In this document: in pieces, positions 16,201-25,676 of the stretch
How positions within the stretch are numbered: position 1 is the stretch's first letter
Layout of the letters: each line of letters begins with the position of its first letter
Assembly (NCBI GenBank): GCA_002269645.1
Contig: NIVC01004901.1
Span: forward strand, 1 to 31,953
Direction: 5' to 3'
DNA: 31,953 nt
From: Macrostomum lignano
Lineage: Eukaryota
Notes under the pieces: model-generated
What the model was told of the DNA's origin: nothing
Database searches by the model: none
The model's input: the letters and a program-made list of their open reading frames with translations, nothing else
Program-made: the position numbers and the translations under genes

Positions 16201-19200
16201 CATGCTCAATTATTGACAAATAGCTCCTAAAGAATTTATTCAATGTGCACATGCGATGCTAAATCTGTGATTTATGTTGGTAAGGTTACCTCCAGAGTAG
16301 ATCGCTGGTAGCTTAAAGCTGTGTATAAATCCGCGTCAAGTACGTCGATCTGGTGTAAAAGTACGCATTGAACTTACAGCAAAGTGTAAAATCTAACACG
16401 AGAAAATACAAAAAAAAATTTTTCATAATTAACGACACAAAAATACTCAACTAACGACGACATGCTGTTAGGTAAGTGTTAAACTACTGTTAGAACAGAA
16501 AGAAGCCTTCAAGCAGGGTCTTTTATTATAACTATTAGCTGCATAACTAAAAAGGACAGGTACCACAACACGACAGACATTGACGACGCGTCGAGCAGAA
16601 GGGTGCGTCTCTTCGTGGGAGCTGCTCTGTCTCACCTGGTGGTTGAAAGCGCATCGGTGTCGGAGCCGCAGTCTTCGACTTGCTCCAGCTCGATCAGCAT
16701 GTCTCCGGATGACGAGGATGACGCCAAACTATTTAATGAAGAGGAAGACGCCGATGTTTTGGAAGAAGCGTAGGTGAGAACAGTTTTCCCGTCCGGCATG
16801 TGTTGATCTTGCTGGAGCAGTTGTCTGCGAGCCGCTTCAATGCCGAGGCAACGATTCGATGAGCAGAGTTGGCTTCGTCGTCATGGCACTCAACAATGGA
16901 CAGCGGATCGGCAGTGTCGAAAGGGGACAGGGTGGAGCGACCGAGCTCCTCGTACTGGTGGTGCTGGGATGAGGCCTAGGCTTGTATTCCGAAGCCAGCT
17001 GTGCTAGCACAGTGGACATTGCTTGCTGCACAATCTGTGCACTATAGCAATTCAATACTTCCGAACTGGGAGTCTCCGAGTGGCGCAGTTCTTCATCGGT
17101 GCTGCGGAGGAGTCAAAGAGGCTCTTGATCGATTGCCTGCGCTGGAAAACTTCGAGCCTCGCTGACAAGAGTCGGGGTCGATGCTGTTAGTCAGGTCGAG
17201 CCGCAGAGCTCTTGCGTGCTCTCGCAGGCAGCTGTCGGTGCCAGCGAAATCCTCTTCGATGCTGTCCAGTCGAGAGGACACGGAGGAGCTACTGATCTGA
17301 ATTGGCCGGTGCTTGACTGCAGTGCTGCTGCTGATGCTGCGACAGCTGAGGCGTTGACAGGTTTGACTGCAGCCAAACCAGGCAATTGGGATTCAAAGTT
17401 TTTTTTGCTTTGATTGCCATGTTTTCTAAGGTAAAGACATTGTCAATTTTGTCAAATTTCCGTCAGATTCGTGCTCGGAAAGTACACGAGCTACTGCAAA
17501 AAAGCATCGTGTCTCGCAGTCAATATGAAACGATGCGCTTAACTTTAACCTGATCGGCGCTGTGACGCATGAAGTTCTTCCATCCTTCCAAAAATTCGAG
17601 TACAAAGAAATACGTATAGCTGATTTACGAGCTCAAATCAGAAACATGCGAACTTTCGCTGGGAAGTGCGCGTTCTGTTGGATTAATTATAAATTCCTTT
17701 CCGTGAACAATATTCAGGATTCAGTGAACAAAGCTTCGAGCGATAGGCATCCGGCTCATATCGGAGCAAAGAAAACAATTGGGAATATTGTTTCTCCCGT
17801 GAGAACTGAGAAGACTTACCGTCTTGAGCAATTGCTGCTGCCGCCTCTGCCGCGGCCCGCTCGACGCAGGCAGATGCCGATTGTCCACGATGCTGGTCTT
17901 GCGCTCCGCCGATGCCGACGCCAACGGTCGGGGCTTGGCCACCCCGATGGCAATGCGACCGCGGGGCGCGGATTTCAAGCAGCGAACCGTCTCCTCCAGG
18001 CTGGCTCGCTCCAAGTTGGTGTCGTTCACGAACAGCAGACGATCGCCAGGCAGAAGTCGGCCGTCCCTGTGCGCTGCTCCGTTCGGCACCAGACTGCGTA
18101 TGATGATCACCGTCTCATCGGCGCTCAGCGGATCTTGATAGTCCAACACGCTGAACCCAGCCAGCGGGTGTCTTTTCCAGCTCCACCACTGTCGGAATAT
18201 TCGACCAGTAGCCGGTGTTGGAAAAATCGTCGAATGATTGACTCTTGTTGTTCCCGCTGCCGCTGCCGCCTCTTGAAGGCAGCGTCGCAGTGTTGGCGTT
18301 CCCGTCTGCGGCGCTCAAGTCTGCCTCGGGCTGCGACTGTCGAGTCGTCCGGCACCGAGTTGTCATCAAATCGTCGTCGTCCATCTGGTCGATGTCGAGA
18401 CTGTCGGCATCGTCTCTGCAAGCTGCCGCCACGTCTCCGTCCTCCTGCTGCAGACGGTTCTGCACTCGCCTTGCGCACACGATTCGAACATGTTTCGGCA
18501 AGTTTTTTAGAATCTCAACCACCTCGAGATGATTCAAGCCGTAAAGCTTTTTGCCATTCACCTGGTGAAGGAGATGGGATAAATGGAATCAAAACTTTTT
18601 TATTAAAGTCACTTAACAGCGACTCGACTTGCATCGAATGTCGAAAGAGTTCTTGCTTGGCTACTAGCAGTAGGGTCAAACGATGGTCAGATAAAAATAA
18701 ACGCAGCTGGACTGTACAATCGCTACGATGCCCAACCCCCCCCCTCTCACCCAGTTTTTACGCTCGTACACTGAAAGGCAACCCCCCCCCCCAAAACAAC
18801 CCCCCATTCCCTCTCCTCTCTCTTCCGCTATCACTCCCTTGAGAGAGAGAAGAGTGGAAAGGCTGAAGGAGGAGAGGAGAGTGTTAAGAAGAAAAGATAG
18901 CTGAATTAGCAGCGCATTCCCCCTGTTCCTGCCTGCTAGAGCAAGTTTCTTGACACACTTAGGAAAGAGAGGAAGGATTTGGGCCAGTACACACAGTAAG
19001 CTACTAGTAAGCCTTTTGCCTAAATCGAGTTTAAACTTGCTCTAGCCATGCGGCTGAACCATGAACCTCCACTTCATATAAAAGAAGGCAGGCAATGGTT
19101 TTTCGAAAGCGTTGAGTCGAGTTTCAGCTTTATTTAAGAAGACAGTCTTTCTGAATCTAGATTAGCGCTTTCGTGCGTTTAGGCGCGTTCAAGCGGTGTG

Positions 19201-25676: not shown

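What the first reader, a model, noticed from the sequence alone, without database searches (positions are those of the whole stretch)
18562..25416. Intronless ~19-ankyrin-repeat gene nested antisense in the intron that splits a PDZ domain of MPDZ/PATJ
Seen: the host PDZ reads ...DELLE (donor 25417) | VNGKKL (acceptor 18561). The 6,855-nt intron between holds a 3.9-kb + strand ORF (19480-23348) with no introns and no minisatellites, whereas the host has short exons and repeat-stuffed introns. Inference: a retroposed or element-carried gene landed in this polarity-scaffold locus and kept coding capacity. The antisense arrangement allows transcriptional interference or dsRNA with the host pre-mRNA. 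The combination of about 19 ANK repeats, a basic K/Q-rich coiled-coil-like stretch and an unrecognised C-terminus matches no family I can name.
Basis: partly seen in the sequence, partly recalled or inferred. Interest (0 to 1): 0.72.

Follow-up and report, generated by a model that had tools for sequence, protein, structure and literature searches.

The report
Ankyrin-repeat gene nested in PATJ intron
An ordinary, already annotated flatworm gene for a large ankyrin-repeat protein sits backwards inside an intron of a cell-polarity (PATJ/MPDZ-like) gene; it is under selection and looks functional, its apparent break in this window is almost certainly an assembly error, and nothing shows that it arrived by retroposition.

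Summary
The window is a Macrostomum lignano contig from assembly GCA_002269645.1. The nested gene is real. On the minus strand a PATJ/MPDZ-like PDZ domain is split by a 6,855-nt GT..AG intron (18562-25416). That intron holds a + strand, single-exon gene of about 17-19 ankyrin repeats, a very basic K/R-rich stretch and a C-terminal half with no detectable relatives.

It is 3,869 nt long, and a missing G at 20446 shifts the frame. The twin contig (g5) is identical apart from that base and encodes an intact 1,289-aa protein. The window shows the same deletion-biased indels elsewhere, so I read the break as a consensus error.

Five contigs carry the locus, in two sequence types. In all five the gene lies in the same intron, so the nesting predates their split. 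Between the types, dN/dS is 0.19 and substitutions fall 18/15/69 by codon position, so the gene is constrained.

I found no parent gene, poly(A) remnant, target-site duplication or element ends, so retroposition is unsupported. The gene is already annotated in GenBank as a hypothetical protein (BOX15_Mlig028949). Antisense single-exon nested genes are the commonest nested class. Interest is low.

The parts
25417..25674 (-). Host (PATJ/MPDZ-like) exon that encodes the N-terminal half of a PDZ domain and ends ...RPHDELLE. The exon's 5' limit was not determined.
   Evidence: tblastn of P0126 residues 1-87 at 100% identity; donor GAG|GTGAGA.
18562..25416 (-). Host intron of 6,855 nt (GT..AG) that contains the whole ANK gene.
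   Evidence: The same junctions occur in L001-L004, where the intron is 6,864 to 8,256 nt.
17820..18561 (-). Host exon that encodes the C-terminal half of the split PDZ (VNGKKLYGLNH...), a linker and the next PDZ domain. In this window it carries a 2-nt deletion at 18158.
19480..23348 (+). Single-exon coding region of the ANK gene (Mlig028949 family; 1,289 codons in the intact copies).
20446..20446 (+). Site of the missing G: GGCAGGGAC in g5 reads GGCAGGAC here. This shifts the reading frame in the window.
19480..21614 (+). Ankyrin-repeat region, residues 1-712, about 17-19 repeats.
   Evidence: Pfam Ank_2, Ank, Ank_4, Ank_3 and Ank_5 with E-values 1e-21 to 1e-47; self-built repeat profile.
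21615..22478 (+). Basic K/R/Q/E-rich region, residues 713-1000, net charge +40. Predicted partly helical, at low confidence.
22479..23345 (+). L/R-rich C-terminal region, residues 1001-1289, with no detectable homologue or fold.
   Evidence: Codon-position differences of 3/0/10.
21174..23348 (+). The 5'-partial 724-aa CDS on record for this contig (P0124).
23805..23856 (+). Cluster of AATAAA/ATTAAA hexamers about 460-510 nt after the stop codon. Candidate poly(A) signals of the ANK gene.
   Evidence: sequence only.
19077..19082 (+). TATAAA hexamer about 400 nt upstream of the ATG, a candidate core promoter element. TATAAT also occurs at 19360.
   Evidence: sequence only; function not tested.
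24349..24407 (.). (CTGT)n microsatellite in the host intron, expanded to 116 copies in type B.
25054..25360 (.). 24-nt minisatellite in the host intron: 12.5 copies here, 46 in type B.

Best explanation
This is an intact, independently annotated, single-exon protein-coding gene of Macrostomum lignano. It belongs to transcript cluster Mlig028949; the window's own record is the 5'-partial 724-aa model. It lies on the opposite strand inside a 6.9-kb intron of a multi-PDZ PATJ/MPDZ-like gene.

The product has 1,289 residues. About 17-19 ankyrin repeats (residues 1-712) would form a protein-binding solenoid. They are followed by a strongly basic, partly helical linker (713-1000) and an L/R-rich C-terminal region (1001-1289) with no homologue outside this species. 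The most likely function is a lineage-restricted scaffold or adaptor that binds partners through the ANK solenoid, with the basic tail giving localisation or nucleic-acid or membrane affinity. That function is inferred.

The frameshift at 20446 is a long-read consensus error of this redundant contig, not a pseudogenising mutation. The nested arrangement is older than the split between the two sequence types in the assembly, which probably reflect the recent whole-genome duplication. The arrangement is most likely a neutral by-product of genome organisation rather than a regulatory device.

Shown: the nesting, the intactness of sister copies, purifying selection, and the absence of homologues for the C-terminal half. 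Inferred: transcription (from a transcript-derived annotation), the scaffold function, and the neutrality of the nesting.
For: Identity: the best hit is P0001, BOX15_Mlig028949g3, at 97% identity and 100% coverage. The cluster holds g1, g2, g3, g5 and a 724-aa model from a 31,953-bp contig, which is this window.

Assembly error: the window CDS differs from g5 by 0 mismatches and 1 gap, at a G run. Across 8.5 kb the window differs from its twin contig by 3 mismatches and 26 indel columns, and in all but one event the bases are missing in the window. One of these is a 2-nt loss in the host exon.

Nesting: all five contigs show the same donor and acceptor with the gene inside the intron.

Selection: between types A and B there are 102 substitutions, distributed 18/15/69 by codon position (p = 1.7e-12). 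dN/dS is 0.19, against 1.5-1.7 in the shifted frames, and the binomial p is 1e-16. The C-terminal half alone gives 8/7/24, p = 3e-4.

Domains: only ANK families are found. Matches to solved structures stop at about residue 685.

Transcription: the GenBank annotation of NIVC01 was derived from a genome-guided transcriptome (PMC5730564).
Against: I could not examine RNA-seq, poly(A)-site or spliced-leader reads, so the + strand transcript is supported only indirectly. Mlig028949 is not mentioned in the text or held supplements of the papers I checked.

I could not read the raw reads at 20446, so a real 1-nt deletion in one genomic copy is not excluded.

The function is inferred from the domain type only. 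AlphaFold2 models of the C-terminal half were unusable, with pLDDT of 42 and 36.

Synonymous divergence (0.07) exceeds the flanking intron divergence (1.6-2.5%). So dN relative to the intron rate is less extreme than dN/dS suggests.
Confidence: 0.8

Rival explanations
1. The gene is a retrogene or element-carried gene. A processed mRNA copy, or a gene captured by a mobile element, inserted into the PATJ-like intron and stayed functional.
For: The CDS is single-exon in a genome that averages 4.9-5.0 introns per gene. The gene is nested in an intron. About 41% of human nested genes are single-exon and insertion is a known route.
Against: No intron-containing parent or any paralogue was found. 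All six cluster members map to this same nested locus, and the next best protein is a generic ANK hit at 27% identity. The sequence after the AATAAA cluster has no A-tract longer than 8. No flanking direct repeats, TIRs or LTRs were found. The insertion, if it happened, predates the A/B split, so the hallmarks could have decayed.
Confidence: 0.15
2. The window copy is a genuinely decaying pseudogene copy. The 1-nt deletion is real in one of the redundant genomic copies produced by polyploidy.
For: A frameshift is present at 20446. M. lignano has extra gene copies that could tolerate a loss. The record for this contig is only a partial 724-aa model.
Against: There are zero substitutions against the intact g5 copy over 3.87 kb. 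The same contig has 20 further deletion-type indels, mostly in homopolymers, including one in a conserved host PDZ exon. The other contigs g1 and g2 show similar private indels.
Confidence: 0.1
3. The gene was acquired horizontally from a bacterium or endosymbiont rich in ANK proteins.
For: The gene is intronless. Bacterial MAG and Wolbachia ANK proteins appear among the hits at about 25% identity.
Against: Eukaryotic hits score equally or better at the same low identity. The 577-aa C-terminal half has no bacterial or any other relative. GC is 54% and GC3 is 61%, in line with the 45-54% GC of neighbouring window sequence, although the two host exons compared are richer at GC 61% and GC3 75%. 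The gene is embedded in both homeologous loci.
Confidence: 0.02
4. The antisense nesting is functional. Transcription of the ANK gene tunes PATJ-like expression through polymerase collision or dsRNA.
For: The geometry permits it. The arrangement is kept in both sequence types. Nested transcription units can cause interference in minigene assays (PMC3192792).
Against: There are no expression data. Conservation across a recent duplication is expected by default. Surveys quoted found no host-nested expression correlation in human and fly.
Confidence: 0.1

Closest known systems
Nested (intronic) protein-coding genes of metazoans, for example Drosophila 2mit in a tim2 intron (PMC3786989) and LRRTM genes in alpha-catenin introns (PMC3933685)
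   Same: The whole gene lies inside one intron of a larger host gene, on the opposite strand, with a single coding exon. quotes about 63% of human nested genes as antisense and about 41% as single-exon.
   Different: The host intron here splits a PDZ domain of a PATJ/MPDZ-like gene, and the nested product is a species-restricted ANK protein. No expression relationship is known.
Long ANK-solenoid scaffolds: the ankyrin-1/2 membrane-binding domain, NOMPC, Kidins220, ANKRD50, ANKRD28/44/52, ANKRD17
   Same: There is a long uninterrupted array of 33-residue ankyrin repeats. The best matches to solved structures are ankyrin-1/2 (E = 6e-74), consensus DARPins and NOMPC.
   Different: Identity is only about 22-29% and is confined to the repeats. 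None of the accessory domains of those families is present: ZU5/UPA/death, KH, NACHT-like or channel domains. The protein has a 577-aa tail with no detectable relatives instead.
Functional retrogenes
   Same: The coding region is intronless and under purifying selection in an intron-rich genome.
   Different: No parent gene, poly(A) remnant or target-site duplication was found.

Membership tests
Ankyrin-repeat superfamily | Tandem ~33-residue repeats that match the Pfam Ank, Ank_2, Ank_3, Ank_4 and Ank_5 models above their gathering scores | tested here: met
   Ank_2 scores 147.5 and 159.8 bits (cut-off 27.3); Ank scores 128 and 126 bits; 17 units by a self-built profile.
Nested intronic gene | The whole coding region lies inside a single intron of another gene | tested here: met
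   the intron is 18562-25416 and the CDS is 19480-23348. The same holds in four other contigs.
Nested intronic gene | An independent transcript with its own promoter and poly(A) site | not testable with these tools
   The evidence is only indirect: the GenBank annotation is transcript-derived, and TATAAA and AATAAA hexamers are present.
Retrogene | Intronless copy of an intron-containing parent gene found elsewhere in the genome | tested here: not met
   every relative above 27% identity maps to this same locus.
Retrogene | A poly(A) tract at the 3' end and flanking target-site duplications | tested here: not met
   no A-run longer than 8 and no flanking direct repeats. An old insertion could have lost them.
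ANKRD50 | An N-terminal NACHT/P-loop-like module before the ANK array | tested here: not met
   the ANKRD50-like hits carry PF25521/PF25520. This protein and P0001 carry only ANK families, and the repeats start at residue 28.
ANKRD17/ANKHD1 | A KH domain (PF00013) C-terminal to the ANK blocks | tested here: not met
   no KH match, even at E-values up to 10 in the C-terminal half.
Canonical ankyrins (ANK1-3) | A ZU5-UPA-death domain module after 24 ANK repeats | tested here: not met
   similarity ends at about residue 685, and there are no ZU5 or death-domain matches.
PP6 regulatory ANK subunits (ANKRD28/44/52) | A protein made almost wholly of ~27-29 ANK repeats, with orthology-level similarity | tested here: not met
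   22-26% identity over about 50% of the query. A 577-aa non-ANK tail is present.
PATJ/MPDZ (host gene) | Many tandem PDZ domains, with best named relatives being PATJ, MPDZ or InaD-like proteins | tested here: met
   'patj homolog', 'Patj' and 'multiple PDZ domain protein' at 41-51% identity and 98-100% coverage; at least 5 PDZ domains on the minus strand.
PATJ/MPDZ (host gene) | An N-terminal L27 domain | not tested
   The 5' end of the host gene was not found in the window.

The most novel reading that the evidence does not exclude
The gene is a Macrostomum-restricted scaffold that joined an ANK solenoid to a newly evolved basic and helical C-terminal half after inserting into the PATJ-like intron. 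On this reading its antisense transcription has become coupled to the regulation of the polarity gene that hosts it.
Probability: 0.05. Interest if true: 0.45.

Novelty: new member of a known kind. Interest (0 to 1): 0.15.

Why it matters
It matters little beyond the annotation of this genome.

- The window's copy should be read as an intact 1,289-aa gene rather than the partial 724-aa model on record.
- The PATJ/MPDZ-like host gene had no called gene within 10 kb of the ANK gene in any of the four sister loci.
- An older UniProt model (A0A1I8IR35) is a sense/antisense chimera.

For Macrostomum researchers the gene is a tidy example of a species-restricted, selectively constrained ANK protein whose C-terminal half is uncharacterised. 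It is also a reminder that frameshifts in Mlig_3_7 contigs are often consensus errors.

Tried and rejected
- **C-terminal half, first search.** A search of the 577 C-terminal residues in the 5.8-billion-protein word-indexed database found nothing, not even its own cluster. I treat that as a limit of the index, because the exhaustive phmmer search found P0001 and only P0001.
- **Other sequence libraries.** Pfam at E-values up to 10 and the PDB sequences gave nothing meaningful for that half.
- **Structure prediction.** Two single-sequence AlphaFold2 runs, on 577 and 289 residues, gave pLDDT of 42 and 36. I did not run fold searches because they would be meaningless on such models.
- **Tiny intron at the frame change.** I considered this and rejected it. 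The only GT..AG candidate nearby is 21 nt, too short and of the wrong phase, and sister copies have a continuous frame.
- **Mobile-element ends and structured RNAs.** None were found.
- **Bacterial-type promoter and terminator scan.** It is irrelevant for a eukaryote.
- **Expression data.** Mlig028949 has no hits in the full-text library or in the held supplements of PMC5816591, PMC7336406, PMC5946080, PMC12896417 and PMC10468722. PMC8629364 has no supplements held.
- **Orthologues in other Macrostomum species.** This could not be tested. The protein databases appear to hold no other Macrostomum proteomes, because even the conserved host query found nothing between 88% and 51% identity.

Full report
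**Observation.** On the minus strand the sequence reads ...RPHDELLE followed by GTGAGA, with the last exon base at 25417. Further down it reads ...TTCACCAG followed by GTGAATGGC (VNGKKLYGLNH...), with the first exon base at 18561. This gives a 6,855-nt GT..AG intron. The joined exons form one PDZ domain. They are collinear with a M. lignano model (P0126, 99% identity) and with spider and crab PATJ homologues, which read ...GDELLEVNGEKLLGMNH... across the same point. The best named relatives are 'patj homolog', 'Patj' and 'multiple PDZ domain protein', at 41-51% identity and 98-100% coverage. At least five PDZ domains lie on the minus strand of the window. The host identification therefore holds.

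**The ORF is broken in this window.** Inside the intron, the + strand from ATG 19480 to the stop at 23346-23348 encodes ankyrin repeats (Pfam Ank_2 at 147.5 and 159.8 bits). It has no tandem repeats, whereas the host introns are packed with minisatellites. However, it is not one ORF here. The span is 3,869 nt, the ORF list splits it into 19429-20517 and 20466-23348, and the frame changes at 20446.

**What the window is.** The joined protein hits BOX15_Mlig028949g3 of Macrostomum lignano at 97% identity over 100% of its 1,289 residues. Its 90% cluster holds g1, g2, g3, g5, an older UniProt model, and a 724-aa model from a contig of exactly 31,953 bp, which is this window. That model maps to 21174-23348. 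The loci of g3, g5, g2 and g1 (L001-L004, all from GCA_002269645.1) are collinear with the window. They fall into two types:

- Type A is the window and g5, which are 99.4% identical over 22 kb.
- Type B is g1, g2 and g3, about 96-97% identical to type A.

All five contigs have the same donor and acceptor, with the ANK gene inside the intron. The intron is 6,855 and 6,864 nt in type A and 8,113-8,256 nt in type B. The difference comes from expansion of a (TCTG)n tract and of a 24-nt minisatellite. M. lignano is a hidden polyploid with a recent whole-genome duplication, and Mlig_3_7 is known to be redundant (PMC10468722; PMC5730564). That explains the multiple copies and means the nesting predates the A/B split.

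**The frameshift.** The window CDS differs from g5 by zero substitutions and a single missing G: GGCAGGGAC reads GGCAGGAC. Over 8.5 kb of non-minisatellite sequence the window differs from its twin contig by 3 mismatches and 26 indel columns. These make up about 21 events, and in all but one the bases are missing in the window, mostly in short homopolymers. One event is a 2-nt loss that breaks the conserved host exon at 18158, so that TPAGLGFSV reads TPAGW.... Contigs g1 and g2 carry their own private indels. This is the signature of an under-polished long-read consensus. I conclude, at about 0.9, that the gene is intact in the animal. The raw reads could not be examined.

**Is it a real gene?** Between the intact A and B copies there are 102 substitutions, distributed 18/15/69 over codon positions (chi-square p = 1.7e-12). 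dN/dS is 0.19, against 1.5-1.7 when the frame is shifted, and 64 of 102 changes are synonymous where 24% would be expected (p = 1e-16). The C-terminal half without relatives shows the same bias on its own (8/7/24, p = 3e-4). The GenBank annotation of this assembly was built only from a genome-guided transcriptome, so a gene model here implies RNA evidence, though I could not see it directly. A TATAAA lies at 19077, the start codon context is ACAATGG, and an AATAAA/ATTAAA cluster lies 460-510 nt after the stop. All are compatible with an autonomous transcription unit, but this is sequence evidence only.

**The protein.**

- Residues 1-712 hold about 17 repeat units by a self-built profile, and about 19 by eye.
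- Residues 713-1000 are strongly basic, with K 15.6%, R 9% and net charge +40.
- Residues 1001-1289 are L/R-rich.

An exhaustive phmmer search of the 577 C-terminal residues against 1.84 billion representative proteins returned only its own cluster. Pfam and PDB sequence searches gave nothing. Single-sequence AlphaFold2 models were unusable, with pLDDT of 42 and 36 and mostly helices. Matches to solved structures are ankyrin-1/2, DARPins, NOMPC, Kidins220 and TRPA1, and they are confined to the repeats. Named relatives such as ANKRD17, ANKRD50 and the PP6 ANK subunits reach only 22-29% identity over half the query. The accessory domains that define those families are absent. The protein is a member of the ANK superfamily only. 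I infer a scaffold or adaptor role.

**Origin.** The retrogene or element-carried idea has one point in its favour: a single coding exon in a genome that averages 4.9-5.0 introns per gene. Against it:

- No parent or paralogue exists outside this locus.
- There is no poly(A) remnant.
- There are no flanking direct or inverted repeats.

An ancient insertion cannot be excluded. The test is synteny in M. cliftonense and M. hystrix, whose data are not in the collections available here.

**How ordinary the arrangement is.** About 63% of human nested genes are antisense and about 41% are single-exon. Large surveys found no host-nested expression correlation, which is consistent with neutrality (PMC3192792). 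Intronic genes make up about 6% of Drosophila genes (PMC3786989).

**Verdict.** The ORF continuity claim is wrong for this window, because of an assembly artefact. The retroposition and interference ideas are unsupported. The gene is already annotated as a hypothetical protein. Interest is low.

Noticed in passing
window 16399-20446, for example 18158 and 20446: This contig carries about 20 deletion-type 1-3 nt indels relative to its near-identical twin (NIVC01000833.1), against only 3 mismatches. They break both the ANK CDS and a conserved host PDZ exon, which points to an under-polished consensus.
   Followed up: yes
window 17824-18532 (+) and UniProt A0A1I8IR35 (P0125): The older 1,579-aa gene model fuses the ANK ORF with + strand translations of antisense host exons, such as the ORF at 17824-18138. 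It is a chimeric artefact.
   Followed up: partly
L001-L004, within 10 kb either side of the ANK gene: No gene is called for the PATJ/MPDZ-like host in the records of these contigs. Only fragmentary UniProt models (340 and 327 aa) from an older assembly cover it.
   Followed up: partly
window 19480-23348 compared with the flanks 18562-19479 and 23349-24340: Between types A and B, synonymous and four-fold-site divergence (about 7%) is about three times the divergence of the flanking intron (1.6-2.5%). 44 of the 102 coding differences lie in a CpG context. This is unexplained.
   Followed up: partly
window 25417/18561 and 2426/1776 (minus strand): Two PDZ domains of the host are split by an intron at the same place (...ELLE|VNG...). 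A third (about 13659/13393) is also split, but its junction was not mapped. This suggests the PDZ units duplicated with the intron already present.
   Followed up: no
window 24349-24407 and 25054-25360; L001 15019-15482 and 16141-17246: The two sequence types differ by large copy-number changes within the same intron: (CTGT)n has 15 versus 116 copies, and the 24-nt minisatellite has 12.5 versus 46 copies.
   Followed up: yes
whole window: About 20 distinct mini- and microsatellite arrays, with periods from 2 to 47 nt and each 0.1-1.3 kb long, fill the host introns. The 8.6 kb from 15770 to 24349, which holds host exons and the ANK gene, has none.
   Followed up: no
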